Numbered from the stretch's first letter, positions 2,008-58,639 are shown. The stretch: DNA of 64,000 nt from Haliotis rufescens (GCF_023055435.1 NW_025963913.1:5642001-5706000); one strand, 5' to 3'. Program-made: numbers and translations. Notes: generated from the sequence alone by a model not told the origin.

Positions 2008-2340
2008 GTGATGTTCGAGGATGTTATCGGGGAGCCCGAAGGAGCCCACAGTGCAGATTGTGTATGGCGTAACTCCTACAAATGCTTCACCTGTGGCAAG
2101 AGCTGCTGTTACACCTTCCTCACCTTCATCTGTGCTATTCCCTTGTCTCTCTGCTGGGGATGCGAGTTCGCCATGATGTCCTTCCAACACATCTGGCAGT
2201 TCACACCCTGCCTCAGGATGTGCAGCAGCTATCTTGGATGCTACCAGAAATTCTTCGGCTCCCTCATCAACTGTTGTTTGGCTCCCATCTGCGAAGCATG
2301 TGGCCTGTGCTTCAGTAAAATCGCCGTCGCCAACAAATAA
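2008..2340 (+). CDS. Caveolin-like gene unit 1 (subfamily A), terminal exon 2; exon 1 lies upstream of the window
   Basis: Acceptor tttcccttgtttgcAG at 2006-2007, then VMFEDVIGEPEGAHSADCVW...HIWQFTP...FSKIAVANK*. Matches the caveolin signature FEDVIAEP. Bases 1-50 resemble the unit-2 intron near 6093, so the window starts inside this gene's intron. AATAAA at 2663. Confidence 0.93.
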   Translation: MMFEDVIGEPEGAHSADCVWRNSYKCFTCGKSCCYTFLTFICAIPLSLCWGCEFAMMSFQHIWQFTPCLRMCSSYLGCYQKFFGSLINCCLAPICEACGLCFSKIAVANK

Positions 2341-4194
2341 CCCAAAATCTCATTAACAACGCTGCATCAAAATGCTCAGGTTCCTATTGGACGAGAATTG
2401 ATCGTGAGGATGGAAGGGACATCGACTCTTGACTCTGACTATTTCTTGAAGTTCTGTCTCGCCGGTTGAGAAAACTGTCTTAACCCCAGAAACTGTGATA
2501 TCTTTCCTTTACCCTTTGATATCCATTGTGTATATATATATATAACTGTTGTGTTCCATATACACGTGTATATGTACCTATCTTGTTTATTTCCTTTCTG
2601 TTGTTTGCTTTGACAATCAAATTTGAATCATATTGTACATAGATTATTGTCTGTACAATCCAAATAAATCTTTACTCACAAGTGTTATCTGGTAGATGGT
2701 GTTTTGGGGATAAACACGTAAACAGTAAAAGTAAATATTAAATAACAGAACATATATAGACAGCGCAAACATGTTTGCAGAAATATGCAAACAGATGGAT
2801 GTTTCCAAAGAAATAAAGACACTTCATAAAACTCAGTAATGGTCATGACAAGTCTCTCTTGACAGTGTTTCTTCGACAGGCAGATCCCCTCACAGGTAAC
2901 GCTGCGATCGGAAAACACGACAGAACGAACTCACCCCGACAGATACTTACAGTCGTTATTTTTCTATGAAATAAAAAAGTCCAGCATTTCACACGTTTTC
3001 AGTGCGAGTCAAACCTGAGTGATTAACGCACTCACTGAGGCACCACGTATTATCCTCGCGTATCCTATTTTCCAACAGTTAACACGATGTTGCTAATATG
3101 TTGATGCATGATTGAGTCAAAACTTAATTATTGTTTGTAGCGCTAGCTGATGTCTTTGGCAATATAATTCAGCTATATTCCTAAAGAAAAAAGATTCCAC
3201 AACAAAAGGGGTGAAGTTCAGCTGCACTCGAGTGCCGTCACCTGTTTCCGCACACCTGATTGGTTTGGTACTTCAGTCAGGTCTATAATGGTTCGGCAAG
3301 TCTAGATTGCCTCAGCTTTGAAATTAAGGATTGCTCTGGGTTCTGTTTGGATTTTAGTTATTTTATTTTGGAGATATATATTATTTAAATGAGAAATCTT
3401 TAGTTCTGGGTCTAAATGTCAGTCTGAGGGCTTTCATGAATGAACAGCCCATGTTTGTCGTACAGTTTTCAACATAATTCTTGCAGCATTAAAATTCAAA
3501 ATGTAACCAAAACCTATTTACAAAATCGGAATGTTGTGAATTTAGAGTGTTCACATTATTTGTCTCTGCCTCTTCATCATGACGCGGCAACCAAACTCTA
3601 AATGACTGCGGACTGTCCTGACGGGTGCTCAGTACTTTACATGAGCCAAATGTTGGCAGGCAGGAAGTGTGCACTGTCAGGTCGACAGCTGAGGACGTCA
3701 CACCACTCGTTATAACAAATCACTGCCCATATGCCTGTTTTATATGCATGTGCATATACACATGTCCTAGCCCCAGCTCCATGGTAATCAAGGATATAAT
3801 CATTTTTCAAAATTTCATCAGTAAGGAGTTTGTAACATATACGAATTTCCACTCGAAATCAAAGCCGTTTGGTTAAGAAGATTATGGAACGAGGACGATG
3901 GCATTGTAGATGTAGATACACTGGGGTCGGATCGCTGAGAGGAAGTGCCACCCAGACTGTGCTTCAAAATACAAGAGTATACTTTCCGTCCGTAAAACAT
4001 GTGAATGTTTTTTTCACCCGACCGCCAGCAACGTTCAAGTCATTTCACGACAGCCTGTAAATAATCCAAACCAGTGCTTGATATTACGAGCAACGTCCCA
4101 CGCAGTCGGGGTACGATGGCACACAATCAACCAGATAACCTAACCATACCACCCTAATCCATTTCAGTCGCCTTTGAAACAAATGTTACCCCCC

Positions 4195-4225
<31 letters not shown>

Positions 4226-5522: not shown

Positions 5523-8290
5523 ATGGCAGAACTTGACATGATGAACAGGGATCCCAACGACCTCAACGACCACTTGAAGGTACGTATCAAATAAAAACAA
5601 TGATTTGAAGACATGTATCAAAGTGCAAATAAAATTTGAAGGATATATAAAGTAACCGTATCAAGTTTATACGAAACGAATAAAGTGAAAGTATTGATAT
5701 GTTTAATCACTGTGTTAGTATGTTAATGTGTACTTTTGATCCAATTAATACTATTTTCTGCTCAAAGGTTTAAAATATGAGGTCATGTATAGGAAATATT
5801 TTTCTTACTTAAAGGTCTAAGATATATATGATATCCACCAAAGTCAGACGTTAATGCAATACTATGTCAAATCAATCTTCTTATCCGTCCACATTAATCC
5901 AAGAGATATGGACAATTAGATGCAACGAATGCCATAACTGAACTCATGGTTTAATGGTACTTTTTTTTATTTAATCTCGATCATAATTTCCCACAACTCC
6001 ACACGGCACTCTGACATTAATCACCAGCCAACCAAAGATTCTGAATACATACGCGCCCGGGCCTAGGCAATCAACGAAGTCTTTATTGAAATTAGCAGTA
6101 CAGGAACGTGGCAATAGGCTGTGTCCTGGAACCACGTATACTCAATGCAAGTATTGATACGAATATTAGAGTTGAAGAAATCCTGTACAGAAATAGAATT
6201 GGAATGAAATAGCTCCAATCGTCTAAGAGCACATAGTGATGAACATTTTTGACATTATTAATGAAAAGAATATGCGAACAAGATGAATACTGTCCTTATT
6301 CTGTAACCAGACATCCGCGGATTGGAGTGGTGTGCTAATTGAACATATTTCGGACAAACTTGGGCGCCGATGCCACATGATCTTGGGACTCGGCAAAGAG
6401 TTTTCACCCGAGAGTCGAACGCCCCAGGCTTATTAAGAACAGGGGTAGAATCTGAGGTCAAAGTGCACCAATACGATCAGTAACAGGGGAGGTTACTCAA
6501 TATACTGACTCTACAACACCCTCATGAGCCTAGTCCCCATTGAACAGTTAATTAGCGTTGATAATTGATAGCGATGGACTGGAAGACAGGATTTAAAACT
6601 TAATACATTTATATGCTCTCTGCTTTATAACATTAAGTCACCTGATGAAGGAGTAAGTATATACTCCGAAACGTTGTGTTTTCTCATAATGAAAAAGTTG
6701 GCATTGATCAATTCTTTTTTCTTTAGACTCCTTAATGCTTTTGGAAATATGTTGCCAGTCCCCCATAAGTGGGTGACCCTTCAGTGGTTGCCCCACGTAT
6801 ATAATGTTTGGCTATTTCGGTGAGGTATACTTATTATAAGATGAGAATTCCCAAATGAATTTTATTCGACATTCACCAGATATTATGTTTGTGAAAAGAG
6901 TTAATGTTTAACTTTCATGATTCTAACATATTGCAATAGGTTATTTAACACGTGGGTGAGTCCATCAGACACATTATGTGAGTCTTTATAAAGTCCTCAA
7001 TCTTTGCTTCATACCAAACAGTTTATGGCTGTTTTTCAATTGGTTGACTGATAAACAGTCAAACACTGTTGTACTGGGCCCTACATAATGCATCGCGTAA
7101 TCCGAGGTTCGACACAACCGAAAATGAGGAATAAATAAGGAATACGCAGGGACCAAGCTATAAGTTCGGTGTTTGACTGTTTGACTGTTGGTATGAGCAA
7201 ATAATTATAAGACTTTTATTTGCTGAAATACGTCCATTCTAGGGGAGCAACCATTGGATTTTCAAAGGTGGAGTGTGTGCTAAAACGTAACGAAGACCTG
7301 TTTTACTGAATTTCTTTTTTACATATACCTCGTATTGTCGGGAAAAAATAATGCTCCTTTTCTTTGCAGAGTTTATTAAAGTGTTCAAAGAATACAGTTC
7401 GTGATATTTCATTGCAAAAATATTTCTTCAGCACATTTTTATGTTGTAAAATATAATTGAGTTCCTAACACATTTAAAGAAAATGCCGCTCTCAAAATCC
7501 CGCCACCTCCACGCCGCAAATAAAATGCTTGCGCCCTAAGCGTTCGTTGCCACAACCAAATAAACAATATCTAATGTTCATCATAACATCAAATCACGTA
7601 TTTTGAGACATATCTATATACATTTAGATAGTATGTATTAAAAGTGACACGTAATCTGCACACTTCGATTTGCGACAATCAAACGTGTCCCCGAAAAAAA
7701 CCTTGTAAATATGTTTCGGTAGTCGGACGCGTTGTTTTTGTTCTGCAGACATCTAGAATTAACCGACTCCAGGGCCATTAAAGTAAAGTATATTGAACCA
7801 GGAAGGGAGTTGGAACAAGCAGGATGGACAGATCATCTAGGACGTTTTCATTCTTTTTGTTATTATTGTCATTTTATTCTCAACGATGGCGGTGTGTGTT
7901 GAAACCTGTAAATAAAACGAGTCACAAAATCCTAAATATTATTTCCCTTGTTTGCAGGTGATGTTCGAGGATGTTATCGGGGAGCCCGAAGGAGCCCACA
8001 GTGCAGATTGTGTATGGCGTAACTCCTACAAATGCTTCACCTGTGGCAAGAGCTGCTGTTACACCTTCCTCACCTTCATCTGTGCTATTCCCTTGTCTCT
8101 CTGCTGGGGATGCGAGTTCGCCTGTTTGTCCTTCCAACACATCTGGCAGTTCACACCCTGCCTCAGGATATGCAGTACCACGCTTGGATGCTACCAGAAA
8201 TTCTTCGGCTCCCTCATCAACTGTTGTTTGGCTCCCATCTGCGAAGCATGTGGCCTGTGCTTCAGTAAAATCGCCGTCGCCAACAAATAA
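5523..8290 (+). CDS. Caveolin-like gene unit 2 (subfamily A), 129 aa; exons 5523-5579 + 7958-8290
   Basis: Exon 1 MAELDMMNRDPNDLNDHLK then GTACGT donor; phase-0 intron; CAG acceptor; exon 2 VMFEDVIGEPEG...KIAVANK*. AATAAA at 8600. Confidence 0.95.
6637..6680 (+). ncRNA. Minimal type I hammerhead ribozyme motif (Penelope-like element pLTR relic)
   Basis: cac-CTGATGA-a-GGAGTA-agtata-TACTCC-GAAAC-GTT-gtg: core boxes, 6-bp stem II, palindromic AACGTT stem III, 3-bp stem I. Confidence 0.6.
6987..7219. mobile_element. Small inverted-repeat (MITE-like) element
   Basis: ataaagtc...ttgcttcataccaaacag mirrored by ctgttggtatgagcaa...gacttttat; inner aaacagtcaaacac / gtgtttgactgttt. Confidence 0.45.
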
Positions 8291-10171: not shown

Positions 10172-10955
10172 CAAAGCGGGGAGCTGTTGGTGGCCGCGAT
10201 AGAGAGCTCCGCAAATCGCGGTGAGGAACTATTGGTGGCCGCGATAGAGAGCTCCGCAAATCGCGGTGAGGAGCTGTTGGTGGCCGCGATAGAGACCTCC
10301 GCAAATCGCGGTGAGGAGCTGTTGGTGGCCGCGATAGAGAGCTCCACAAATCGCGGTGAGGAGCTGTTGGTGGCCGCGATAGAGACCTCCGCAAATCGCG
10401 GTGAGGAGCTGTTCGTGGCCGCGATAGAGAGCTCCGCAAATCGCGTTGAGGAGCTGTTCGTGGCCGCGATAGAGAGCTCCGCAAATCGCGGTGAGGAACT
10501 ATTGGTGGCCGCGATAGAGAGCTCCACAAATGGCGGTGAGGAACTGTTCGTGGCCGCGATAGAGAGCTCCGCAAATCGCGGTGAGGAACTATTGGTGGCC
10601 GCGATAGAGAGCTCCACAAATCGCGGTGAGGAACTATTGGTGGCCGCGATAGAGAGCTCCGCAAATGGCGGTGAGGAACTATTGGTGGCCGCGATAGAGA
10701 GCTCCACAAATGGCGGTGAGGAACTATTGGTGGCCGCGATAGAGAGCTCCGCAAATCGCGGTGAGGAACTATTGGTGGCCGCGATAGAGAGCTCCACAAA
10801 TGGCGGTGAGGAACTATTGGTGGCCGCGATAGAGAGCTCCGCAAATCGCGGTGAGGAACTATTGGTGGCCGCGACAGAGAGCTCCGCAAATGGCGGTGAG
10901 GAACTATTGGTGGCCGCGACAGAGAGCTCCACAAATCGCGGTGAGGAGCTGTTGC
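10172..10955. repeat. GC/CpG-rich 45-bp minisatellite, about 17 copies
   Basis: Unit GGTGAGGARCTRTTGGTGGCCGCGATAGAGAGCTCCRCAAATCGC; 15-aa periodic ORFs on both strands. Confidence 0.96.
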
Positions 10956-13861: not shown

Positions 13862-14970
13862 ATGGGTGAACAGTCAACCATCGATTTGGACAACCGAGAT
13901 CCCAACAACATCAACGACCATTTGAAGGTATATTATTTATGTATCCTTATGTTTACGTATCACTGCATGCTGCCTTTGGATATTGCCGAACTGATTGTTA
14001 GATCAATTAATTGGATACAGAAATCGGACAAGCTTTGTATAACATGTTGTCCTAATGCAAAGACTCGTTAACATTTCCTTGTGAGAAATGAATATGTGCA
14101 CATGACAATGTTTGAATTAGAACTGATAAATTAATTATTACGCAAATGAATGTACAAATGGTGTACACAAGCATCAGTAGACAATATGAAGTAGTTGTTT
14201 CTCTTTCGGGCGAAACATTGTCATGAAGTCTTTTTCATTACGAAAATAATATCATAACTATCCAAAAGAGAACTTCGATAATAACACAATGAAAATAAAC
14301 GCCCTGAAACCTCTATCTTCCTCATTTGTTGATGTGACCTCTTCTACTCCCTTCAAAACATTATGCCAAAACTATACGATTTTAGGCATCATTCAAAATA
14401 CAATACAATACAAATGGATATTTGGTAACACTATGGTACATTATTTATCTCGGGCTAACTAAATTTACCCACTCATGATAACGTAACGATATCGACAAAT
14501 TAACAAATATGTTCATCTGGACAATTATGATTTACTGAGAGTATTTCACAGTATCAAAGAGTGTAGTTCACAGATAATATGACGTTCACACATCAGACAA
14601 CCTAATGTGTCCAAGCTAATGTTTCCTACTTTACAACCCACAGGTCCAGTTTGAGGATGTCTTGGCGGAGCCCGAAGGTGCCCACAGCATTGACTGCTGC
14701 TGGAAGTTTACCAACACTTGCTTCAACTGCGCCTTCAAATGCTGCTACATGTTGATGACCCTGTGTGGACCTATCTACGGTCTCTGCTATGGTTGGCAGT
14801 ACGCGATGCTTGCTTGTTCGCACATTTGGCAGTACACACCACAGATCAGAGCTTGCGAAATCAACTGTGTCATGCTGAGGAAAATATACACCATCTGCCT
14901 CAGCTGCTGCCTGACGCCATTCTGCGAATCATGCGGTGGCTTCTTCAGCAGGATTCAAGTCAAACAGTAA
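13862..14970 (+). CDS. Caveolin-like gene unit 3 (subfamily B, most divergent B copy), 130 aa; exons 13862-13927 + 14644-14970
   Basis: Exon 1 MGEQSTIDLDNRDPNNINDHLK|GTATAT; acceptor acaacccacAG; exon 2 VQFEDVLAEPEGAHSIDCCW...FSRIQVKQ*. AATAAA at 15363. Confidence 0.95.
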
Positions 14971-20009: not shown

Positions 20010-21799
20010 ATGCCTAAACAAGCTGCTGTTGAATCATCCATCGATTTGGAAAACCGAGATCCCAACAACATCAACGACCACTTGAAGGTAAAAACATCGA
20101 AGTTCATAAAATGCGACTTTAACTGATTGATTTGAAATCCTATATTCTGTAGCACGTTGATGTCGTTATGCCTGGGATCGGTGATAGAAGACAAAATGAT
20201 TTTTTTATTAGCAGATAAATATTAACACCAATGAAAATGTTTTAATGATACAAATGAAATAATACTTTGGCAAGAGTAGGCGTTGTCTTTAGCATTGCTC
20301 TGATGGCGATGAATTAAATAAGTTGATAAAGCATTTGTCAAACTCGCCGGGTTCAATTCCCACATAGGTACAATTATGCTAGCTTAATTTAATTTCGCTA
20401 ACTGCAGCGTAAAACAATTTAATTGTCATTGTATGGCTTTCAAGTGACAGTTAAATCCTACCCTTCCATAATGTGTCTCCATAGATTTGGTAATAACGAA
20501 TGTGTCTTTTGTAATAATTGAGGATGCATTTTGGCATTGTCTTAAAACCAAATCCTTTAAATAACATAATGTCTATTCATAATTCACATAAGACACATTT
20601 TTGTTACAGTCAAGCTTTTTAATCAAGGTTTCAGATGAATGTCAATAATGACACGTTTCTTGTCTACATGATGCGTGATGATATCCCGTACTTTGACTTT
20701 AACGATGAGTTTTAACTTCTCTTTACTCACTGGCACTGACTTTAATGGATCATTTACTGTGGTCATGCTTGACATGGTTGACAGCGTGGCGTCGAACTCC
20801 TAAGACGTGGATCATTGCGCATGATGATGATGATGATGATGATGATGATGGCTGGGTTGTCTGGTCCACCCTCAATTGTTTGCAGTATTGCAGTATTGCT
20901 GGGTGCGGCCTTTGGCATCTAATTAACATTTTCTTCTGAAAATGCGTTTGAGTGGCGGGGACTACCGGTAGAGAAGGACATGCTTACCCTTTTCGCGAAC
21001 ACCTGGTGTCATCACTGATTTTCAGCAGTGATCCATTCAAATAATTGTCATCATTATTTTGTGTTTTACACCTCATGGAGATTGCTTATTCTCTGGCGTT
21101 AACGTTTTGAATTTATTATGACACGTCTACAGCTTATCAATTACTATTTAAAAAATGTTCAACTCACGTAAATACAAATAATATATAAAAACACACCAAG
21201 GGTATGATATATTTCAATGTGCGCCTGTCAAATAAAATACAATGATTGGGATAGATGGTCGATGATTATGAAAGTATACACAATGTAAAGAAGCATGAGT
21301 GCGGTACATACATCACATTCATACATGATTTCTCTGACTGAAATACATAACATAATGTAATATGCATATTTTCAATATTTGGATCATAAGTGTAGTTTCC
21401 AGATAATGTGCAGTTCACACATCAGATAACCTAACGTGTCCAAGCTAATATTTCCTACTTTACAACCCACAGGTCCAGTTTGAGGATGTTTTGGCGGAGC
21501 CCGAAGGTGCCCACAGCATTGATTGCTGCTGGAAGTTTACCAACACTTGCTTCAACTGCGCCTTCAAATGCTGCTACATGTTGATGACCCTTTGTGGACC
21601 TCTCTACGGCCTCTACTACGGTTGGAGTTACGCTATGCTTGCCTGTGCTCACATTTGGCAGTACACACCACAGATCAAAGCTTGCGAGATCAACTGCGTC
21701 ATGATGAGGAAAGTGTACACCATCTGCCTCAACTGCTGCCTGACGCCATGCTGCGAGTCCTGTGGTGCTGTCTTCAGCAGGATTCAAGTCAAACAATAA
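20010..21799 (+). CDS. Caveolin-like gene unit 4 (B), 134 aa; exons 20010-20087 + 21473-21799
   Basis: Exon 1 MPKQAAVESSIDLENRDPNNINDHLK|GTAAAA; CAG acceptor; intact exon 2 with signature motif. AATAAA at 22323. Confidence 0.94.
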
Positions 21800-41416: not shown

Positions 41417-42920
41417 TACTGATCCGCAAAAGAAACATCACCATGGATACATATATGAGAAACCTTATTTGTCCAAATACTGTAAACATACTTTGAGACA
41501 TATTAAAAAGATTAAACTTGGCAAAACTGATCATCAAAGTTGAAATTAAAGTGTCAAATGTTCTTAAAGTGAAACACAACACTAGTCTCTGAGAAAATGG
41601 CATCACAAGTCAGTATCTCATGTGTCCGCCATGTGCATTGATGACTGACGTGTAACATCGATACATGGAATGGATGAGGCGGTTGAAGAAGGCCATAGGC
41701 ACCTGAGCCAACACTCTGAAGAACGCCTGACGCAGTTCAGCTGCAGTTGTCGGCCTTGGTCGGACGTCATTCAGCCGTCTTTGAATCTCGTCCCACAGGT
41801 GTTCTATGGGATTTAAATCGGGACTGAGGGCAGGCCACTGCATGGTTCTGATGCCATTCTGCTGGAGGAAGCCTCTTGTTGCTCTCGCAGTGTGGACACG
41901 GGCGTTATCATGAGAAAACTCGTGATTGCGATGACGTGCCAAATGAGGTATGACGTGTGGTCTCAAGACTTGATCAATGTACCGAGCTGCTGTGACACCA
42001 TTGCCTCTCCCTGGACCGATGTTCTGGAAGACCACAGAGCCGACCCTTTGTGCAAGACCAATTCCACCCCACTAGTCTCTCTCAACAACACAAGCATCCG
42101 AATAACGTTCCCCACAGCGTCGCCAGACCCTCTCTCTCTCTGCCATCTGCTGTTGAGATACAGTACCGGCTCTCGTCTGAGAAGAGGACTCTTCTCCACT
42201 GCTGGTGGCGCCAATGCTGGTGCTGTGTTGTCCACTGAAGACGGTCCCGTCGATGACGTGGTGTCAGAATGGGTCCTCGGTGTGGCCTGTGACAGTCGAG
42301 GTGTCAATCGTCGACGCACGGTGTCCGCACTAATGAGCCGCTGGTGTGTCCCCATGGTCTGTCGAGAAGTTTCCGCAGCAGTAACAAAGCGATCTTGAAG
42401 ATGCAGTCGCACAATCTGACGATCCTGACTTCGGGTGGTGACCCTTGGTCTTCCACTACGTGGTCGGTCATCTGTAGGTTTGGTGGTCTGGCACCGTTTC
42501 TGGAGCATGTATATGGTCCTTACGTGGACTTGAAATGCATTGGCTACTTGCCGGGCGGTTTGTCCAGCTTGCAATCGTCCAAGGGCTTGGTGTTGCTGAT
42601 TTCTTGCCAATTTTGGCATGTGGTAGCAATTCAATAACGAATGAATGTTATCCGATCTGGGTGGATTTTTATAGGACAAAAAATGGGGGAACGCATGTGC
42701 ATTTCAACTCACGTGCATCGGTTACCATGGCCGTTGCCGTGATGCGTTTGGGCGATCGGTTTTATTGTCATCTGCTTTGTTTTGTTTTTATAAAATTTCA
42801 TTTTTCCGGACAAGGTAATGTTAAATTTTGAGAAACTTTGACAAAAAATACCCAGATATTTAAATGACAACATTTTATGCAATGTTACTTAGGGTGACGT
42901 TTTTTTTTTGCTGTTCAGTA
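41417..42920 (-). mobile_element. Near full-length Tc1 element (DD34E transposase, frameshifted) with TIRs and TA flanks
   Basis: TIRs tactgatccgcaaaagaaacatcacc / ggtgacgtttttttttttgctgttcagta. N-terminal MPKLAR...GRLQAG...RSGRPRVTT; D(NARVH)-34 aa-E in [15 protein letters not shown]. Confidence 0.92.
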
Positions 42921-43319
42921 TATATACGTGTGTGTAATTGTTTAAATGTACAAGCAAAGCCGGTTTTCATGGGTAATATTGGAAAGAACTGTAGGTTTTT
43001 GTAGTTGTACCCTGAAATAAACGAAGTCTGACTGAACTGAGAACACAACATAACCAGTGAACGGCTCTGTATACGAAGCTAAGAATTACTTTCGGTTTCA
43101 CTATAGATCGTATTCAATTCAATTCCAATGGCTGGAAAAAAGTTTGCCTAAACACGTGTGGTATTCAGGTATGACAGTGTTTGACCCTGTAGTTAGGTAG
43201 GTAGTATATGGTGTTTATCGCAGCACAGGTTGTCACACTTGGGTTTAGTGACGGTACCGTTTGGCCCGTAGCAGCAACCGCAGGAATTACTGTCTGTTAA
43301 GAAAGGCTACTATTACAAA

Positions 43320-44823
43320 ATGGCAGGAATTGATTTGGAAAACCGAGATCCAAACAACATCAACGACCATTTGAAGGTAACAATATTTATACTAATCCAT
43401 GATATTTGCGTATTCAATCCAGGTTTCTCTTATTCGAATCTCTTTCATCAAAAGAAAGTACAAGAGTTTATGAAAATTTGTCGCAAGCTTTTGCTGATCG
43501 TACATCTCCTTAGAATACTGTTTTAAGAAAGTTCATTTGTCACATTAAATTTACTCTGAATTATTTTTTTAATTAGGCCTTTTCTTTAAAAGCCAAGCAC
43601 AGCCAATCTGAGCATACATTTACACTAGGGGCCGGCAAGTTGATATTGGGAAGCTGGAATTCCTTTTTTTTTAAAACAAACCTTATATATTATATACATT
43701 TATATTATATTTTTCCTCAGTTTCATTAAAGAGCGTTAACTGAACTTATTCAGTGTTTAATACTATCAGTATTGAGCTTTAGGGGAGAAAAGGTAAAAAT
43801 TGTTGTACTTCAACTTTCAGAGGCAAGCAATGAAAAAAACAAAAATTTCAGTCGTCAATATGTCAATTTCATTTACGACTGCTGTGTACATAATCTGCTT
43901 GCGAGAAAATTTAAACGTTGAAGGAACAATGTTGGAGTCCGGGTGTTATTCGGGGGTAAGGGTGGTGGGTTGTGTGTGTGTGTGAATCATTCACTTGTCA
44001 TGTCAAGGAACATGGTTGCTCTCCGATATGGGTGTCACTCACTCACTCACTCACAGAGAGAAAGCGGGTGAGTTTGGTTTAACGCCGCTTTGAGGAGTAC
44101 TCCAGTTACATCCCTGCGTTTCATGATGCAGGTTCAGACGTTTACCACGTTAGTACGGGCATGGTGCTTACAAACCTAATAACATAATCGGGGCAAACCG
44201 GGATTCGAACTCATAATCACAGATTTGTGGGACCCAACTCTGTGCAGCAAACTGCATCGCATTAGACGACTGGATCCTCCGTGGCCCCCGATATTACTAT
44301 GAAGCGGATGTACATAGCAATAATATTTGTTACGATAAATGGTGTCGAATCATTGCTTAAACCTATATAATTTATCAATAAGAAACTAAAAACGTTTCCT
44401 TTGACTAAAATAAACTGTAAAATATAATTTACAAATGTAAAAAGTTCACATAACCTAATGCGTTCTAACTGACGTTTCCTATTTTACAACCCACAGGTCC
44501 AGTTTGAGGATGTTTTGGCTGAGCCCGAAGGTGCACACAGCATTGACTGCTGCTGGAAGTTTACCAACACTTGCTTCAACTGCGCCTTCAAATGCTGCTA
44601 CATGTTGATGACCCTGTGTGGACCTCTCTACGGTCTCTACTACGGTTGGAGTTACGCCATGCTTGCCTGTGCTCACATTTGGCAGTACACACCACAGATC
44701 AAAGCTTGCGAAATCAACTGCACCATGATGAGGAAAGTGTACACCATCTGCCTCAACTGCTGCCTGACGCCTTTCTGCGAGTCCTGCGGTGCCTTCTTCA
44801 GCAGGATACAAGTCAAGCAATAA
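43320..44823 (+). CDS. Caveolin-like gene unit 9 (B), 127 aa; exons 43320-43376 + 44497-44823
   Basis: Exon 1 MAGIDLENRDPNNINDHLK|GTAACA; CAG acceptor; intact exon 2. AATAAA at 45168. Confidence 0.95.
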
Positions 44824-46427
44824 CTCTCAGATAATCCCATGGCGCTCTTCAACAATGCAAAGCATCTCACACACATTTCAAATATCGTGCATTGTCATGT
44901 TCTGATATGGAGCACAACCTTCATGTGTGGCTGTAAATTAGGAACTGAAACTCGAAGAACATCCGTTTAGTTGTCTAACTACAAAGTATTTCGGTATTTG
45001 TTTCGGCTTGGAGATTAAGGACCCTGAGTTTATATTTCTCCTGTTGAAGAAAGAAAGGACAAATTTTTAGTGCCTAAATGTTTCCATTTGTGCCATGATC
45101 AGGATCAAAACAATCAGTGCACAATATAATATTGTACATATCTATGTTCTCAGTTGTTTCTGTAATCAATAAACCGTTTTTATTAACTTAATGCAATTCC
45201 TTGTTTGTCGTGGATTTCTGCTTTATTTGTGGGGATGCTCAAATTGACTTTTACTTGAAAGTTGCAACATCGATCACTGTTACATGCTACTGAGACAGCT
45301 CTTTCTTTTTTCGAAAACCTAGTCTGAGTTTGTCTCTCACTTGCAAACTTGCTCGGCATTTTGGCCTCTCCAAAACAACTTGCCTGATTTTGAACTGAAT
45401 TTTGTGTTTACATTTGTTCTGACTTTAAGTAAGGTTCATGGCATCATTAGCTCAGTTTTCAGTGTTTTCATCCGGCTATTACCTGACTGCAATCTGGCTG
45501 CTATCAGGCTCTTACGTCCTTTTTATCTGGGCGATATCCATCTGCAATGGGGCTGCTAGCCAGCTGCTAGCAAGCTGCCATCGAGATGGTGTGTGTAATG
45601 TCCGGCACTCAACAAACTATGTGCAGAATACAGAGGGAACACCCATTACCTACTTTATGTCTAAAGAAACAATTTGTGGATGCAACCCGATATTTGGCAC
45701 TCCAGACTATAACACTTTATTCGTAGTTTGTTAACATGACCCATTTCTACTGGACACAGATGACACATAATTTGCCAAAGTTGTAAAGAGTTCACATAAT
45801 GTATTCCGTCAATGCAGTTGTGGTTGAGCGGCAGGTGTAAGCCTGAAATGTTATGACTTTGTGGGTGAGCTCCACTTTAAACAATAGTTCACTCACATCA
45901 TGGCGTGTCAGGGAATAGTGGGGCTAAACCCAAGTGATGCTGGTCGGTTAGCACTTTTGTGAAACCCACTAGCATGCGCATACTAGGGTTCGAACCCACG
46001 ACCATATTTTTCTGGTAGCCTAAGAGATGTAACTGCACAGCGAATTATGGCGCCTTAGACGACTGGGCAACACATGCTTCCTGAAAAGATATTAAAAAGT
46101 TGAAAACACAATGGCTCACGCAAGAGTGATCAGCAGTTGAATGCGCGGAATAAATGTCTTTATGCACAGGTTAAGAATAGCCCCGTCTTTGTTATATCTA
46201 CAGTCATAAAGGATTTACCTTTGGAGACAATTGATGTTTTTTTGTCACCACGTGACTAATCTTGGCCAATAGAAAACATGACTGACACTCGCTGATATAA
46301 TGACAGTGTCTGGTGATGTTGTTAAGTAAACGAACCTGTCGTTATGTACACATATACAAAATGTACGTTTTAACACACCTATGACACTTTACTTTTGTGA
46401 CTGTGCCGGTTGTATCCTGTTGAAAAA

Positions 46428-48015
46428 ATGGCCGAACTTGATTTGGAAAACCGAGATCCTAACAACATCAACGACCATCTGAAGGTAATCTTGTTATAAG
46501 CATAAGTAAGTTTAAGTGAAAAATGCTTTCTTGAATATTTTTGAAGAATAGAAGAGAATATAGTAAAAGAAAACAGAATCCGCACTAAACTCGCTGCAGT
46601 TAACAGAGACTGAACAGTGGAACTGCGTCTGTCACATTCATTGCTTAATTGTTAATTAGGTCCTTTCTTTCAAAAGCAGGTACATTATAGAATAACTGAC
46701 AATTTTAAATTCGACATATCTTGTATGAAATATATTTAACGCTTCTCTTTCCCATTGTTTTTTGGGGGTACGCAAACCCCATTCTTTGCTAAGATTGCTT
46801 GTATAAATACTGGATTAGAAATAGAACTCCAGTATCGTGATGGTCGTTGAACATTTTCAGTGTCAAGGCGGGTGGTAGGGAAAGGAAAGGACATGCTCCC
46901 CCGTTTGTTAAACACCTCGCATAATCATTGCATTATTCAATGATTTGAAAGTGTAGGTGTCTGTGAATGTGTAGCTGCAATCATTGTTTAAGGTGTTTCT
47001 TGTCATGTGACAGAGATACTGGTAGGAATATGTCTGAGGCTCGGATGTTTTAACATAGACTTGTCAGCAAAAGATCGGGTTGAAGTGGCCTCCGTGCGTG
47101 GGTAGGCGTTGATATCCGATAAGTGGCGATAAGTTCAAATGTTTGCTCCTCACATCCCGTCTGTGGCTCTTTTAATTATAAATAATTTTGAAAAGGTGTC
47201 ACTATTGATCAGCTAGTGTATTCATACCAATAACGTGTAATAATTAAGTGTCTTCCATTATGCATCAGCGAATATAAGCTTGAATGATTCTTTACATAAA
47301 AATAATGTATTATAGATAAAATCATGTCATTTGCAATAATGGTTTTAACATTGTTTTTGTAAAACGTTGTCTACTTGATATCAATCGATTGAGGATGTTT
47401 TGGCTGAGGCTGAAGGTGGCGACTGGGTTCAAGTTGTCGCCCTCATTGTCCAATATGTGTCTCCTTCAATGACCAAACAGTTTGTAAATATGTCAGTATT
47501 GAATATCATCGAGTCTTCGTTACAAATAAGTGTGTTTCAAATATCTAAATGTGTTTTCACAGGACATGGGGAAATATAAATACTAATTTGTCTTCACATA
47601 CAATGAAAATAAGCAATAAACGGTGATATATTTTGCATGAATGTTGACAACTGTCGAAGTGTCAAATGTTTCAACTTAATATCATTAGGTCCAGTTTGAG
47701 GATGTCTTGGCTGAGCCCGAAGGTGCACACAGCATTGACTGCTGCTGGAAGTTTACCAACACTTGCTTCAACTGCTCCTTCAAATGCTGCTACATGTTGA
47801 TGACCCTGTGTGGACCTCTCTACGGCCTCTACTACGGCTGCAGTTACGCCATGCTTGCCTGTTCTCACATTTGGCAGTACACACCACAGATCAAAGCATG
47901 TGAGATCAACTGCATCATGATGCGGAAAATATACACCATCTGCCTCAACTGCTGCCTGACGCCATGCTGCGAGTCCTGCGGTGCCGTCTTCAGCAGGATA
48001 CAAGTCAAACAATAA
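46428..48015 (+). CDS. Caveolin-like gene unit 10 (B), 127 aa; exons 46428-46484 + 47689-48015
   Basis: Exon 1 MAELDLENRDPNNINDHLK|GTAATC; TAG acceptor (atcattAG); intact exon 2. AATAAA at 48452. Confidence 0.94.
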
Positions 48016-49189
48016 AAAAGACACAATCTGGAAGTATCCTGGTGTTCTTACACCAAGTAAAACCTCAGCGTAAGACTGATCTGGATGACTCAAGCACACA
48101 CTGACACAATCTTGACTGACACAATCTTGGCCTCCCAGGCGCGCTTGTACTATATAAAGCATTAACGTAAAAATGATATGGGGGAACCTAATACACATTT
48201 TACATGTCGTCTATACGCGAAATGTGTAAGATGCTGAAATGTTCTGGCGCCCATTTCAACCTACATATGTTACATAAAGTAGGAAGACAAATACATCCGC
48301 TCAGTTGTCCAACCAAAGAGGGGAAACTCTGTCATTATATTTCAACTGTTATAATGAAAAGACACCGCCGCGTCCTTATAATTACAAGAATTTGACGTAA
48401 ACAAAATGTGTGTTAAATTGAACAAATTCATATAACCACAATCCTCTGATCAATAAAACGCCCTTCATATGCTTGTTACATTTTTGTGTGTTATGGAATT
48501 ATGACTTTATTTGTGAGGAGACATGACAAAATATTTGGAAGTGACACCATGATACATAACAATTACACGTCACTGTCAAGTTACTATCTATTCACTTTAT
48601 CGAGAGCATATACTGGTGAAAAGCTTTATGTGATGTCTGTGTGAATCTGATACAAAATTGTTTAAACATGAGATACATGTTCATGTATGGACACAATCTG
48701 TTTACAGTGTGCCCTGCAAGACATACACCTTGTTTTTCACTGGGTACGCACACCGCATTATTTTTTCAGATTAACCACAATGCCGGGTGAACGATCGTAT
48801 TTGTATAACCTGAGAACAAAATTATTTTCGGATCATATTATTTTTTACGCTTTTCCCTTTTACTGCTATTAGGTTACTTTGACCCAAACATGTGTGACTG
48901 AACTGAAATGAACTGAACCTTTAACTGAACAGCGAGCCTGGCCACCTGGTGCCGTTAATCGCCTCTTACGACAAGCATAGTCACCTTTTAGGGCAGGCAT
49001 GGCTTGGTAAGACCGGATCTAACCCTGATCTTTATGGGTCACTTCATTACTACTTGCAGACAATTACATGACACAATACAATGTTCGTCGACGATAACAC
49101 ATAACACCAAACTGATTGCCCACGGAAAGACCATGTACAAAGAATGACATCTTCCACAGAGGTTCGTTACATGACTGTCATCACCCAGA

Positions 49190-50531: not shown

Positions 50532-51809
50532 ATGGCCGAACTTGATCTGGAAAACCGAGATCCTAACAACATCAATGACCACTTAAAGGTAAGCTTATAT
50601 ATTTCCATACATTCATGCTAGTGTATTTAAATGAATCAGGGTTTCTCCGTCATCAATAGAGAAAGGAATATGAAGTCGATGGAAAACAAACCGTACATTT
50701 GACATTAATGGACTGATGTATGTCAAGGAATACTCTGCATCGGATCTTTATACCCCAAATATAATCTTCAATGAAAGAATCTGTTAAAGCATTTATTTCT
50801 ATCGAACAGATAGATGTGTGCCCGAGTGACTCTATTTGTATTGTGTAAGCGGTTTATGGAATAATGTTGTCATCTTTTCCCTTCCCAAAGTTATGATAAT
50901 ATTTACGGAGTAAGTTTAATCCATGTAATATGTGCTTGACGATGTCCTAAATTAGAAATGCATAAGCATCAATACTGGTCTCACTTGAATAATTGTGTGG
51001 GTTTTAATTACGTTTTCTGTTACTGGATTGGGCAAAACTTCTAGTGAATTCTTTTTCCACTCGCGACCAGTGGTATGCTACGAGGAAAGGGCATGTTCAG
51101 TCGTTTGTCAGTCACCTTGTGTGATCATGATCGTTATGGCTTAGTTGAAGGTTGTGTGACTTCCATTTTGTAGAATGGTGTCTCTTCGTGTGACAGTACT
51201 AGGGTAGGAATAAGCAGTTGATGATATAATTTACACCTAGGTGAATATCCTTTTCAGTGGGATTGGTAGCCCATGGGTTAAAGTGGTCGCTCGCCATGTT
51301 CAAAGTGTGTCTCTTTCAATTACAAAACATTTCGCAAACGTGCCATTATTGATGTTCAATAGGTTTTCGTTACAAATACGTGTGTTTCAAATATCTTAAT
51401 GCGTAAGTAATAAACGGTAATATATTTTGCAATAATGTTGACAACTGTTAAAGTGTCAAATGTTTCAACTTAATATCATTAGGTCCAGTTTGAGGATGTC
51501 TTGGCTGAGCCCGAAGGTGCACACAGCATTGACTGCTGCTGGAAGTTTACCAACACTTGCTTCAACTGCTCCTTCAAATGCTGCTACATGTTGATGACCC
51601 TGTGTGGACCTCTCTACGGTCTCTACTACGGTTGGAGTTACGCCATGCTTGCCTGTGATCACATTTGGCAGTACACACCACAGATCAAAGCCTGTGAGAT
51701 CAACTGCATCATGATGAGGAAAATATACACCATCTGCCTCAACTGCTGCCTGACGCCATTCTGCGAGTCTTGTGGTGCCTTCTTCAGTAGGATACAAGTC
51801 AAACAGTAA
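50532..51809 (+). CDS. Caveolin-like gene unit 11 (B), 127 aa; exons 50532-50588 + 51483-51809
   Basis: Exon 1 MAELDLENRDPNNINDHLK|GTAAGC; TAG acceptor; intact exon 2. AATAAA at 52219. Confidence 0.94.
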
Positions 51810-52663: not shown

Positions 52664-52686
52664 AGTCCGGACTAATGCCGATTTAA

Positions 52687-55429: not shown

Positions 55430-56150
55430 ACGCACTCAAACACACACAAATCATACATAAGCACACAGGCACAAGCAAACACACACACACACACACACAC
55501 AGCGCACACGCACAAACACATACACCCACACCCCCGAACACAAACACACAAACATTCACAAACATACACACATAAACACGCAAACACACAGACAGACACA
55601 CACACGCACACATACATACACAGACACACACATACACACAGAGACACACACACAGAGACATACACAGACACACATACACATACCACAGGTACAATGGAAA
55701 ACGACATTTAGTGCAAGAGGAGTGAACTACATTAGATGTAATTTATTTATTTGAATAAATAAATGATGTATTTTTCATGTATCTTTAACCCATATTTTGT
55801 ACGAATATTGAATATAACTCAAATATTGAGTATATTTTTAACGATGTAGAATGAGGTTGGGGATTTTCTAAAAAGCGAATAGTACCTTCTGTTCTGAAAT
55901 AGAAATGTTGACTGGACTGAAACTATATGTATGTTTTGAAATGCTCACACACAGACACACAGACACACGCACGCACGGACGTACGCACACACACACACGC
56001 ACGCACACACACGACCATCATACACTCACACCACCAACACCACGCACACACATTCATACACACACCCACACTCACACCAAAACAAGAACAAGAACAAGAA
56101 CAAGAAAAACAACAAGAACAAGAACAACAACAACAACAACAACAGCAATA
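55430..56150. repeat. Two imperfect (CA)n tracts plus (CAAGAA)n/(CAA)n
   Basis: Directly visible at 55430-55690 and 55945-56150. Confidence 0.9.
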
Positions 56151-56970
56151 AAGCAAATGCAACACACATCCCCGAATATTAAATGAGCGGCCTTAGAACC
56201 CTAAACAGTCTTTTCAAGTCGCATAACTCTGAGGTCTTTGTGGTCTTATGTCTCTTAATAATGTTATAACTTGGGGTTTCTTTTCAAATCTAGTGACCCA
56301 AATTCAATGTCACAGTATTTTTAAAATTAGTTCTCAGCTTTTAAGCATGCCCAAATTACACAACAAATTCAAACACCTTGAACAGGTTGGTGAATGGCTC
56401 GACAGCAGCGAGTGCAAACTGTCACTTTGTTATCTTCAGACATTATTTGTCGAATATGTTACTGTATGAGTACGCTTGCAGCGTAACGTCCCATGCTTGT
56501 TTTAGCTAATGCTATACAGTTTTAGCTGAGCTGGGTGGTAGATAGGCCTGTGCCTTACAAAGTCTCACTGACAGAAATTGTAAGCACTATTCGGAAAAGC
56601 ACAAAAGAATCTATCAGATTTATTCAAAAGTCCATGCTGGGATCTTCAATGAAATAACAATTCCCATAGTAAAGTGAATGGTTATTAATAGTATCTACAA
56701 ACTGTGCTCCGTCGTCACTATGGGCACAGACATAAAGATTTCAATGCGTTCTGCTGTAGGGATCTCATGACGTTTTCACTGCAGTGAACCACGTGTCACC
56801 TTTAGACCAATGTCAGAGAGCCTTATTTACTGAATCTGAAGTTAGGGCAGTGTAAGGCCCTGTTACTATGTAAACATATACATAATGGACGTCATGACAG
56901 TTTTTGCGACACTCTGCTTCTAACAGCTTTGGCAAAAAGATCTGCTGCCCCAAAGCCTTCCGCAGTCAAA

Positions 56971-58639
56971 ATGGCTGAAATTGATTTGGAGAACCGTGAT
57001 CCTAACAATATCAACGACCATTTGAAGGTAAACTTTTGGGCATAAAGTTATAAAAGCGTGATTTAAAGTTTCCATTAGTTATTGGTTTTTATCCCCCGCC
57101 AAACAAAGTTGGCGGGGGATATAGAAACGGGCTCCGTCCGTCCGTCCGTCTCGTTTCGTTTCCGGAGCATAACTTAGAAACCGTTCAATATTTTTTCATC
57201 AAACTTTGCAGGTCTGTCAGGTACATATTGAACTGGTGCCTTTTGCTATTTAAATTTTTTTGAAATTTTTATTTTTTACGTTTCCATGGCAACAAGATGG
57301 ACTTTGGTTCTGTGAGGTAAAGGTTCGTTTCCGGAGCATTACTCATAAACCGTTCAATATTTTTTCATCAAACTTTGCGGGTTTGTCAGGTACATGCCGA
57401 ACTGGTGCCCTTTTGCTATTTAAATTTTTTTGAAATTTTTATTTTTTACGTTTCCATGTCAACAAGATGGACTTAGGTTCCAAACTCTTCTTTTATTTAC
57501 AATTTCCATGACAAATTCCACCTCGGTTAAAAAAGGTTAGGGTTTGTTTAGATTTATTTATGTCATAAATTCTGCAACAGGGGCGGGGGATATAGCCACG
57601 ATAGTGGCAAACTCTTGTTATTCTTGTGTTTATTTTTGTATTCTTGAGTATGTGGCATTTGATTGAAGTGCCTAAACAAACAGAGCGTGACCTGATCGAG
57701 CTGTGAGAAAATATTAAATGATGTTACTTTTTCAGAATGTTTCATTAATGTTCCCCTTCGGAAAATATACATCTTCATGGATTAACTACCTTTGTATATT
57801 AGGAAACGAATGAAAAGAGGGGGTTAGTAAGTGAGTTATAACAGTCTTATGGGGTAAGAGGTAAATGATGCAGAATTTGTACCCATGAGAACGGGTTTGG
57901 TACTGTCAAGCCACGATCATAGGATTCTTGCACATGGAAGGGAAACAACCAACTCAGCGAATGCCGCGCGACGCGCTATCCGTGCCCGATAAAGGAAAAA
58001 AGAACATAGATTTGTAAGATATTCAAATTAAAAGATTAAACACGTACTCACAGCTTTAGCCTCAGCATACTTTATCACGGACTTTGTTTTTGCACGTTAG
58101 GTTATCGTTTTTACAGACAAAACATGTTTAAGTACGTTTGTACCTGATTAGGGGATATTCAAATTTCTTGGTTACAATAAACGTGCCAATCATGTGCACT
58201 ATACCTTTTGAAATAGTGTCGATATTATATTGTCATTAATCTAGGCATGAGTGAAGTATGAGGTGTGAATCAAATGTGTCCTAACTAACGTTCTGCTATC
58301 GCAATCCAACAGGTCCAGTTTGAGGATGTCTTGGCTGAGCCCGAAGGTGCCCACAGCATTGACTGTTGCTGGAAGTTTACCAACACATGCTTCAACTGCG
58401 CCTTCAAATGCTGCTACATGTTGATGACCCTGTGTGGACCTCTCTACGGCCTCTACTACGGTTGGAGTTACGCCATGCTTGCCTGTGCTCACGTGTGGCA
58501 GTACACACCACAGATCAGAGCTTGTGAGATCAACTGCATCATGATGCGGAAAATATACACCATCTGCCTCAACTGCTGCCTGACGCCATGCTGCGAGTCC
58601 TGTGGCGCTATCTTTAGTAGGATACAAGTTAAGAAGTAA
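56971..58639 (+). CDS. Caveolin-like gene unit 12 (B), 127 aa; exons 56971-57027 + 58313-58639
   Basis: Exon 1 MAEIDLENRDPNNINDHLK|GTAAAC; CAG acceptor; exon 2 ends FSRIQVKK*. AATAAA at 59004. Confidence 0.95.
57086..57619 (+). mobile_element. Helentron-associated non-autonomous element (HINE / DINE-1 / pearl-like) in the unit-12 intron
   Basis: T-run; 5' atcccccgcc...ggcgggggat inverted repeat; (TCCG)n; two tandem core repeats of about 170 bp; 3' subTIR ggcgggggatata; GCCAC-gata-GTGGC hairpin; ends in TT. Confidence 0.8.

What the first reader, a model, noticed from the sequence alone, without database searches (positions are those of the whole stretch)
2008..58639. A 12-unit tandem array of compact caveolin genes, each intact copy encoding a different protein
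Seen: 12 co-oriented two-exon units in about 57 kb, in two subfamilies, with no other host gene between them; the array probably continues upstream. Known: vertebrates have three caveolins; human CAV1 assembles as an 11-protomer disc; cavins are vertebrate-specific; the K|xxFEDV phase-0 intron matches CAV1/CAV3. Inference: a lineage-specific amplified caveolin system. Near-identical protomers sharing the pin (NRDP), signature and C-terminal beta strand could co-assemble into combinatorial hetero-oligomeric discs for a cavin-independent role, for example in stress, immunity or secretory epithelia. I cannot verify whether this cluster is already described.
Basis: partly seen in the sequence, partly recalled or inferred. 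Interest (0 to 1): 0.85.

Follow-up and report, generated by a model that had tools for sequence, protein, structure and literature searches.

The report
Abalone tandem caveolin gene array
This stretch of the red abalone genome holds a real row of small caveolin (membrane-scaffold) genes: 11 intact and one broken here, 22 in all, at least two of them shown to be spliced; the genes are already in public annotation, so it is a solid but fairly ordinary gene-family expansion.

Summary
The window carries 12 co-oriented two-exon caveolin units: 11 intact and one pseudogene (U7). They fall into subfamily A (U1-2) and subfamily B (U3-12). All introns are GT-AG, phase 0, at K|V(Q/M)FEDV. All four N gaps lie between genes.

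The array barely continues upstream: only exon 1 of U1 lies there. It runs about 96 kb downstream, giving 22 exon-2 units plus the pseudogene over about 155 kb, in five subfamilies. One cysteine-poorer caveolin sits on another contig.

The genome is Haliotis rufescens. Twelve of my 21 models equal RefSeq 'caveolin-1/3-like' proteins, so the genes are already annotated, but I found no paper describing the cluster.

The copies are old: B exon-2 dS is 0.12-0.55 and flanks are mostly unalignable. They are under purifying selection (dN/dS about 0.13). H. cracherodii proteins each match one particular copy. RNA-like contigs carry the exact predicted splice joints of U9 and U10.

Subfamily B is a Haliotis-only clade on a long stem. 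Patella, Dreissena, Ruditapes and Aplysia also have multi-copy caveolins.

Mixed discs and an immune or stress role remain untested. The scan's first readers also noted the downstream part of the array.

The parts
2008..2340 (+). U1 exon 2 (subfamily A). Exon 1 lies outside the window at -679..-623.
   Evidence: Pfam PF01146 E 4e-35. AG acceptor. Exon 1 found upstream. Model equals RefSeq XP_046358104.1 = P0086.
5523..8290 (+). U2 (subfamily A): exon 1 5523-5579, intron 2378 nt, exon 2 7958-8290; 129 aa.
   Evidence: Equals P0084 / XP_046358284.2.
13862..14970 (+). U3 (subfamily B): exon 1 13862-13927, exon 2 14644-14970; 130 aa.
   Evidence: Equals P0009, a sequence also carried by H. cracherodii.
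20010..21799 (+). U4 (B): exon 1 20010-20087, exon 2 21473-21799; 134 aa, with a longer N-terminus (MPKQAAVESS..).
   Evidence: Equals P0010, also carried by H. cracherodii.
24005..25327 (+). U5 (B): exon 1 24005-24070, exon 2 25001-25327; 130 aa.
30166..31889 (+). U6 (B): exon 1 30166-30231, exon 2 31563-31889; 130 aa.
   Evidence: Exon 2 is 97% identical to H. cracherodii P0001.
34457..36412 (+). U7 pseudogene: exon 1 34457-34522 is intact. Of exon 2 only the first ~50 nt and last ~15 nt remain (about 36340-36412).
   Evidence: tblastn remnant 36331-36387. blastn blocks and alignment against U8 show a ~260-nt internal deletion.
37260..38871 (+). U8 (B): exon 1 37260-37325, exon 2 38545-38871; 130 aa.
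   Evidence: Equals P0017 / XP_046358102.1. AF2 model and Foldseek hit to 7SC0.
43248..45148 (+). U9 (B) transcript as seen in RNA-like contigs: exon 1 CDS 43320-43376, intron 43377-44496, exon 2 CDS 44497-44823, 3'UTR to at least 45148.
   Evidence: Spliced joint 43374/44495 (cut +2), GT..AG, in runs X2 and X3 and not in DNA run X15; contig pieces in table 8. Equals P0019.
46416..48478 (+). U10 (B) transcript: exon 1 CDS 46428-46484, intron 46485-47688, exon 2 CDS 47689-48015, 3'UTR to at least 48478.
   Evidence: Spliced joint 46482/47687 (cut +2), GT..AG, in X1 and X3 and absent from X15.
50532..51809 (+). U11 (B): exon 1 50532-50588, exon 2 51483-51809; 127 aa.
   Evidence: Equals P0014. 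By my reading, a loose end in X2 at 46424 translates to the peptide upstream of U11's exon 1.
56971..58639 (+). U12 (B): exon 1 56971-57027, exon 2 58313-58639; 127 aa.
41610..42679 (-). Decayed Tc1/mariner-type transposase in the U8-U9 spacer, next to the gap at 41135-41341. Not part of the caveolin system.
   Evidence: Pfam DDE_3 E 5e-13 and HTH domains.

Best explanation
The window holds the first 12 units of a genuine caveolin gene cluster in red abalone (Haliotis rufescens). The cluster has 22 exon-2 units plus one pseudogene over about 155 kb. It was most likely built by repeated tandem duplication (unequal crossing-over), starting from an older molluscan set of caveolin types (A, E, C, D). 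Subfamily B arose within abalones on a long stem branch and then multiplied to 12 intact copies plus the pseudogene. Each unit is its own transcription unit. A tiny exon 1 encodes a 4-13-residue N-terminus and the pin motif. It is joined at a phase-0 intron to one exon that encodes the signature motif, scaffolding region, membrane-embedded helices and C-terminal tail. The products are minimal (124-134 aa), cysteine-rich Type II caveolins. By homology with human CAV1 they should form spiral disc-shaped oligomers embedded in the cytoplasmic membrane leaflet, acting without cavins. The copies have been kept for a long time by purifying selection on the protein, while promoters, introns and 3'UTRs diverged. 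I therefore think they are retained mainly for dosage and for divided-up expression (regulatory subfunctionalisation). Mixing of co-expressed, near-identical protomers in one disc would be a likely by-product rather than a designed code. Shown: gene structure, copy number in this assembly, selection regime, splicing of U9 and U10, presence in other abalones. Inferred: duplication mechanism, disc assembly, membrane role, S-acylation of the many cysteines, reason for retention.
For: Family: Pfam PF01146 E 1e-22 to 1e-36; phmmer to human CAV1 7SC0 at 4e-24 over residues 47-172; the only Foldseek PDB hit is 7sc0_A (prob 1.0, E 1.5e-4). Structure: canonical GT-AG, phase-0 introns in all modelled units, and 12 of 21 models are identical to RefSeq proteins. 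Extent: 23 PF01146 exon-2 matches in the 1.33-Gb genome, 22 of them within window coordinates 2002-154511. Age and selection: B exon-2 dS 0.12-0.55, mean dN/dS 0.13. Exon 2 is 88-97% identical in nucleotides, while upstream, intron and 3'UTR sequences are mostly at background level. Other species: H. cracherodii proteins each sit closest to one particular copy at 0-5 differences, with two sequences identical in both species. H. asinina and H. discus B-type proteins interleave with the red abalone copies inside a 100/100 Haliotis-only clade. Expression: exon-only coverage and exact GT..AG joints for U9 and U10 in RNA-like runs X1-X3, absent from DNA run X15. Loose ends, by my reading, match the U11 5'UTR and an MAEQSTI-type copy (U5/U6/U8). 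Independent DNA: X15 contigs (about 1.6% divergent, organism E) run through the U9-U10 spacer at depth 39-48. No cavin (PF15237) match in the genome.
Against: Continuity across the four N gaps is untested, so the exact copy number rests on this one assembly. Runs X1-X3 are only guessed to be RNA, and contigs cannot rank expression. Only two copies have a proven splice joint. Tissue and cell type are unknown, so neither co-expression in one cell nor divided expression is shown. No oligomer was modelled: the complex job gave no verdict, and the monomer model is only moderate (pLDDT 72, pTM 0.33, C-terminal strand not formed). Dosage versus subfunctionalisation cannot be told apart from sequence alone. 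About half of the informative site pairs in B exon 2 are incompatible. Some gene conversion may therefore blur ages, although the PHI test was not significant.
Confidence: 0.85

Rival explanations
1. Combinatorial hetero-oligomer system. The near-identical B paralogues, and perhaps A, are co-expressed and deliberately mixed in discs, so that paralogue composition tunes disc properties for a special role such as stress, immunity or secretion.
For: Of 108 exon-2 positions in the B copies, 86 are invariant and the changes at the other 22 are mostly conservative. The pin, signature and C-terminal motifs are shared. By my reading of splice joints and loose ends, contigs of three paralogue types (U9, U11, MAEQSTI-type) occur in the single run X2. 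From general knowledge, vertebrate CAV1 and CAV2 hetero-oligomerise.
Against: No test supports it: the B+A complex prediction scored 0.00, which counts as no verdict. Differences between copies are few and conservative and lie under purifying selection (dN/dS 0.13), which gives little material for a functional code. Same-cell co-expression is unknown. Nothing ties the cluster to stress or immunity.
Confidence: 0.2
2. Pure dosage amplification. The copies are functionally redundant and are kept only because a tissue, such as the large foot muscle, needs very large amounts of caveolin.
For: The proteins are 88-98% identical with conservative changes. Contigs of several copies occur in the same RNA-like run.
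Against: Dosage arrays are usually young or homogenised. Here dS reaches 0.55, flanks are unalignable, and H. cracherodii proteins each match one particular copy. Promoter regions differ between most copies.
Confidence: 0.3
3. Assembly artefact. Allelic haplotigs or mis-scaffolded repeats inflate one or a few genes into an apparent array.
For: Four N gaps lie within the array. Short-read contigs of X15 break inside exon 2.
Against: Even the closest B pairs differ at dS 0.12 and by about 8-10% in the few alignable flanks, against about 1.6% for an independent DNA sample. Every copy encodes a different protein. Distinct partner sequences exist in the separately assembled H. cracherodii, H. rubra and H. 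asinina. X15 contigs cross the U9-U10 spacer at single-copy-like depth, while the exon-2 bins sum to about 6-10 times that. The tool warns this is not a copy number.
Confidence: 0.03
4. One large gene with many alternative exons. A shared promoter and cluster-wide splicing would pick one exon 2, as in protocadherin or Dscam-type loci.
For: At the far end of the cluster, RefSeq 'isoform X2' joins exon 1 of U22 to the exon 2 of U23, which has no exon 1 of its own.
Against: Each window unit has its own ATG exon 1. RNA-like contigs start just upstream of each exon 1 (43248, 46416) and splice only to that unit's own exon 2. No U9-exon 1 to U10-exon 2 joint was seen.
Confidence: 0.03

Closest known systems
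Human caveolin-1 / caveolin-3 (Type II caveolins; CAV1 8S complex, PDB 7SC0)
   Same: The same Pfam family. Pin motif NRDP, signature FEDV.AEP, helical scaffolding, intramembrane and spoke regions, and a C-terminal hydrophobic-alternating tail all align to CAV1 residues 47-172. The intron sits at the position aligned to CAV1 K65|I66, which by my recollection of the human gene structure is the exon 2/3 boundary.
   Different: There is no long N-terminal region: only 4-13 residues precede the pin motif. The proteins have 13-17 cysteines against 3 in CAV1, and the B type has none exactly at the three aligned CAV1 cysteine positions (my mapping). No cavins were found in the genome. There are 22 clustered genes against 3 dispersed or paired ones.
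Vertebrate CAV1-CAV2 linked gene pair
   Same: Neighbouring caveolin paralogues. From general knowledge their products hetero-oligomerise, which makes them the natural precedent for mixed assemblies.
   Different: That is two strongly diverged genes. Here a dozen near-identical copies sit alongside four older types.
Multi-copy caveolin sets of other molluscs (Patella caerulea, Patella vulgata, Lottia, Dreissena polymorpha, Ruditapes, Aplysia)
   Same: Small (125-134 aa), cysteine-rich caveolins. Several distinct proteins per species, partly on one contig with near-consecutive locus tags or accessions. Eight caveolins are counted in Aplysia (PMC9334734). Abalone types A, C, D and E group with these.
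   Different: Subfamily B has no member outside Haliotis among the hits (52% or less to any other genus). It sits on a 0.6 substitutions-per-site stem. I know of no published description of any of these clusters.
Ciona Cav-a and other invertebrate caveolins (Apis, C. elegans)
   Same: These caveolins work without cavins. Ciona Cav-a bends membranes and protects muscle and notochord (PMC7383883), which is the best functional model for what abalone caveolins may do.
   Different: Ciona has three caveolin genes and C. elegans, from general knowledge, two. None is reported as a large tandem array. No functional data exist for the abalone genes.

Membership tests
Caveolin (Pfam PF01146) | Match to the family profile above the curated cut-off | tested here: met
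   78-124 bits against a cut-off of 25 for the five exon 2s scanned. There are 23 matches over the cut-off in the genome.
Caveolin (Pfam PF01146) | Signature motif FEDVIAEP | tested here: met
   FEDVLAEP (B) and FEDVIGEP (A) at the start of exon 2. They align to CAV1 F68-P75.
Type II caveolins (Han et al. 2025, PMC12330381) | Pin motif N-terminal to the signature motif; the paper reports it only in Type II caveolins | tested here: met
   IDLxNRDPNN aligns to CAV1 I49-H58. The paper's statement on the pin motif was read.
Type II caveolins | Helical spiral protomer resembling CAV1 in 7SC0 | tested here: met
   The AF2 model of U8 has one long helical region, residues 38-124, at pLDDT 72. Foldseek's sole PDB hit is 7sc0_A at prob 1.0, but TM is only 0.39.
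Type II caveolins | C-terminal beta-strand that builds the central barrel | tested here: inconclusive
   The tails RIQVKQ and KIAVANK align to CAV1 V170-I172. The monomer model shows no strand at 125-130, and no oligomer was modelled.
Type II caveolins | Assembly into a disc-shaped oligomer (11-mer in human CAV1) | not testable with these tools
The two-chain job gave no verdict.
Caveola-forming caveolins (CAV1/CAV3-like function) | Ability to generate caveolae or membrane curvature, with or without cavins | not testable with these tools
   This needs expression assays. No cavin PF15237 match was found in the genome, and that search rang nowhere, so absence is not proven.
Tandemly arrayed gene family | Adjacent paralogues in the same orientation with no unrelated gene between | tested here: met
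   12 units on the + strand with spacers of 1.6-5.6 kb. The spacers hold only transposon debris, repeats and ORFs without a Pfam match. Outside the window a LicD-like ORF and three inverted units interrupt the array.
Functional (non-pseudogene) paralogues | Intact ORF, purifying selection, transcription | tested here: met
   11 of the 12 window units are intact. Mean dN/dS is 0.13. Spliced contigs were found for U9 and U10. Transcription of the other copies was not examined directly.

The most novel reading that the evidence does not exclude
Abalones, and perhaps molluscs in general, may run the largest caveolin repertoire known in any animal. On this reading, the abalone-specific B subfamily provides a set of minimal, cysteine-rich (possibly multiply S-acylated), cavin-independent caveolins. 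Paralogue-specific promoters would set the composition of mixed discs, giving a natural system in which disc composition is genetically tunable.
Probability: 0.2. Interest if true: 0.6.

Novelty: new member of a known kind. Interest (0 to 1): 0.4.

Why it matters
Caveolins are studied almost entirely in vertebrates, which have three genes and need cavins. An animal that keeps 22 clustered genes for stripped-down caveolins, with no detectable cavin, offers natural sequence variants of the disc-forming core. It also raises the question of what caveolin discs do on their own. The unique 3'UTRs make each copy separately measurable. The value is as a resource and a comparative-genomics point. The genes are already in RefSeq, similar multi-copy sets exist in other molluscs, and no unusual mechanism has been shown.

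Tried and rejected
- **Complex prediction.** U8 (B, P0017) with U1 (A, P0086) scored 0.00 in both runs. The tool's verdict is 'no answer', so it counts neither for nor against binding.
- **Cysteines on one helical face.** This would fit membrane-facing S-acylation. Only one segment of the B type was weakly non-random (p 0.03); the A and D types were not. Not supported.
- **Recombination or gene conversion among B exon 2s.** The PHI-type permutation test gave p 0.30, although 49% of informative site pairs are incompatible. Inconclusive.
- **The look-up of encoding contigs.** I wanted it to compare the orthologous loci of H. asinina and H. cracherodii.
- **Literature.** I searched for caveolin with abalone, Haliotis, tandem duplication, mollusc, expanded gene families and disk abalone. 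No paper describes this cluster. The only relevant mention is '8 caveolins' in Aplysia.
- **Other genes in the window.** The largest non-caveolin ORFs gave Pfam hits only to transposase domains.
- **Exon 1 of two other units.** Exon 1 of the singleton caveolin on contig C68 was not found within 9.7 kb upstream by motif. No exon 1 was found between U22 and U23.
- **Rejected readings.** Retrocopies are excluded because the introns are kept. Haplotig artefact and a single alternatively spliced mega-gene are treated under the rivals.
- **Handling of spliced models.** Joined exon models were built only inside scripts, for translation, identity, dN/dS and trees. Searches used single exons by reference, or database proteins that proved identical to the models.


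Full report
**1. What is in the window**

The window is 64 kb at 40% G+C, with four N runs. A tblastn search with two exon-2 translations finds 11 full-length copies and one 19-residue remnant, all on the + strand. The five copies scanned match Pfam Caveolin PF01146 at 78-124 bits, against a cut-off of 25.

Upstream of each exon 2 lies a small ATG exon encoding M..(I/L)D(L/M)xNRDPNN(I/L)NDHLK. It ends at AAG|GT. Each exon 2 begins after an AG acceptor with V(Q/M)FEDV. All junctions are GT-AG and phase 0. Introns within the window are 716-2378 nt, and the proteins are 127-134 aa.

Unit 1 has only its exon 2 in the window. Its exon 1 lies 623-679 nt before the window start. Unit 7 keeps exon 1 but has lost about 260 nt from the middle of exon 2, so it is a pseudogene. 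The window therefore holds 12 units, 11 of them intact, in two subfamilies: A (U1-2) and B (U3-12). Every intact copy encodes a different protein.

**2. The gaps**

The gaps at 15684-15824, 27154-27283, 41135-41341 and 59108-59258 all lie in spacers between a stop codon and the next start codon. No exon, intron or reading frame crosses a gap.

Gapped spacers (4.4-5.8 kb) are no longer than the longest ungapped ones (1.6-5.6 kb). I could not test physical continuity across the gaps. 

**3. Source and full extent**

The window is contig C135:5642001-5706000 of a 1.33-Gb genome. The contig length of 13,835,785 equals that recorded for Haliotis rufescens RefSeq proteins. Twelve of my 21 spliced models are identical to red abalone 'caveolin-1-like' or 'caveolin-3-like' RefSeq proteins: U1, U2, U3, U4, U8, U9, U11, U14 and U18-21.

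A six-frame PF01146 scan of the whole genome gives 23 exon-2 matches. Twenty-two lie within window coordinates 2002-154511, and one lies on contig C68. The 20 kb upstream of the window holds no further exon 2.

Downstream the array continues as follows:

- U13-14: subfamily B.
- U15-17: subfamily C, on the minus strand.
- U18-21: subfamily D.
- U22 and U23: subfamily E.

U23 has no exon 1 of its own. RefSeq 'isoform X2' (P0041) equals exon 1 of U22 joined to exon 2 of U23, which would make it an alternative terminal exon.

A LicD-family ORF sits between U14 and U15. The C68 singleton is a cysteine-poorer caveolin.

**4. Not an artefact, not dead copies**

Among the 11 modelled B copies, exon-2 dS is 0.12-0.55 and dN/dS averages 0.13. 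Exon 2 is 88-97% identical in nucleotides. Upstream regions, introns and 3'UTRs are mostly at background similarity. The exceptions are a few blocks: upstream of U5, U6 and U8 at about 90%, and the 3'UTRs of U4, U5 and U6 at 88-92%. Even these blocks are far more diverged than the ~1.6% separating the assembly from an independent DNA sample.

H. cracherodii proteins each have one nearest red abalone copy at 0-5 differences. Two sequences are identical in both species.

Laying contigs of four public runs on 43200-49199 gave the following:

- Three runs (X1-X3) cover only exons, UTRs and repeats.
- They carry joints at exactly the predicted introns of U9 (43377-44496) and U10 (46485-47688), both GT..AG.
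- These joints are absent from DNA run X15.
- By my reading, loose ends in X2 match the 5'UTR of U11 and an MAEQSTI-type exon 1 (U5, U6 or U8).
- X15 contigs cross the U9-U10 spacer at depth 39-48. The exon-2 bins sum to 276-410, which is what shared paralogue words would give. The tool warns this is not a copy number.

X1-X3 are only guessed to be RNA by the tool. Their exon-only pattern and spliced joints are what make me read them as RNA.

**5. History**

I built a maximum-likelihood tree (LG+G4) of 45 caveolins:

- The B copies form a 100/100 clade on a 0.6 substitutions-per-site stem. This clade holds only Haliotis sequences, and H. asinina and H. discus proteins interleave with the red abalone copies.
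- Type A groups with Gigantopelta, a nemertean and a bryozoan.
- C and D group with Patella, Lottia and bivalves.
- E branches between these groups.

In searches, B is at most 52% identical to any protein outside Haliotis. A reaches 75% to Gigantopelta and 65% to a nemertean.

The cluster is therefore an old molluscan caveolin locus to which abalones added a derived, amplified subfamily. That expansion predates the split of the abalone species sampled.

U1 and U2 differ by two short amino-acid patches plus one exon-1 residue (dS 0.027, dN/dS about 1.2, on very few changes). The U2-type patch is shared with H. cracherodii, so this pair also predates that split.

**6. What the proteins look like**

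P0001, the H. cracherodii near-twin of U6, aligns to human CAV1 in 7SC0 over CAV1 residues 47-172 (E 4e-24). The alignment covers the pin motif, signature motif, scaffolding, intramembrane and spoke regions, and the start of the C-terminal strand.

An AF2 model of U8, built with a 65-sequence alignment, has pLDDT 72 and one long helical region at 38-124. Its only Foldseek hit in the PDB is 7sc0_A.

The proteins start only 4-13 residues before the pin motif, so they lack the long N-terminal region of CAV1. They carry 13-17 cysteines. Other mollusc caveolins carry 14-15, so cysteine richness is a molluscan trait and not special to this array.

The 22 variable exon-2 positions among the B copies mostly toggle between similar residues.

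No cavin (PF15237) match was found in the genome, but that search rang nowhere, so absence is not proven. This agrees with the published absence of cavins in invertebrates (PMC7383883).

**7. How it most likely works**

Shown: independent two-exon genes, at least two of them spliced as predicted, long kept under purifying selection.

Inferred from homology: the products form CAV1-like discs in the cytoplasmic leaflet and shape or organise membranes without cavins, as Ciona Cav-a does (PMC7383883).

Inferred from the pattern of conserved proteins with diverged regulatory DNA: the copies are retained for dosage and divided expression. Co-expressed copies probably mix in discs simply because their interfaces are nearly the same. 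A purposeful combinatorial code, or an immune or stress role, has no support here.

**8. Comparison and novelty**

All sequence-level features that define caveolins, and Type II caveolins in particular, are met. Oligomer formation and membrane activity could not be tested.

The genes are already predicted in RefSeq for H. rufescens, H. cracherodii, H. rubra and H. asinina. Multi-copy sets occur in Patella caerulea (at least eight locus tags between SNE40_015775 and 015849), Dreissena, Ruditapes and Gigantopelta. Eight caveolins are counted in Aplysia (PMC9334734). The 2025 survey of caveolin evolution mentions only 'multiple paralogs' in Parahoxozoa (PMC12330381).

I found no paper describing this cluster. 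I therefore class it as a new member of a known kind: a well-supported tandem gene-family expansion of moderate interest.

**9. Limits**

- The complex prediction gave no verdict.
- Joined exon models were used only inside scripts. Searches were done exon by exon by reference, or with database proteins identical to the models.
- The human CAV1 exon boundary (K65|I66) is from my own knowledge of the gene structure and was not checked here.

Noticed in passing
window coordinates 150763-154514 (beyond the window; loci L034/L035): U23 is a complete caveolin exon 2 lying 1.4 kb after U22, with no exon 1 of its own. RefSeq 'caveolin-1-like isoform X2' (P0041) equals exon 1 of U22 plus exon 2 of U23. 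That would give two mutually exclusive terminal exons, each encoding a whole caveolin core.
   Followed up: partly
L037:3387-4559 (window coordinates 83387-84559): A 390-aa ORF between U14 and U15 matches Pfam LicD (E 1.7e-9), but only over the first 27 profile positions. It is a non-caveolin gene inside the extended array.
   Followed up: partly
G000:C68:17975740-17976069 (L009:1507-1839): The only caveolin outside the cluster. It has about 6 cysteines in exon 2 and is more vertebrate-like in composition. Its exon 1 was not found within 9.7 kb upstream.
   Followed up: partly
window 44000-44399, 46000-46199, 48800-48999: Short stretches with very high summed contig depth in both the DNA and the RNA-like runs (up to about 5e5). 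They appear to be very high-copy dispersed repeats, one inside the U9 intron and two in spacers.
   Followed up: no
window 10180-10954, 60648-61358, 698-1037: Minisatellites with periods of 45, 32 and 23 nt (17, 22 and 15 copies). They create long spurious ORFs in several frames.
   Followed up: no
window 16005-16397(-), 28595-28966(-), 41610-42679(-): Decayed Tc1/mariner-type transposase fragments (DDE_3, HTH_Tnp_Tc3_2). Those at 16005 and 41610 lie just after assembly gaps.
   Followed up: partly
Pfam gave no match at E 0.01.
   Followed up: partly
P0002 (H. discus discus 'caveolin-1', ANK58183.1): This published B-type sequence has the EGAHSID segment displaced to a later position compared with all genomic copies. 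It looks like a rearranged or chimeric clone.
   Followed up: no
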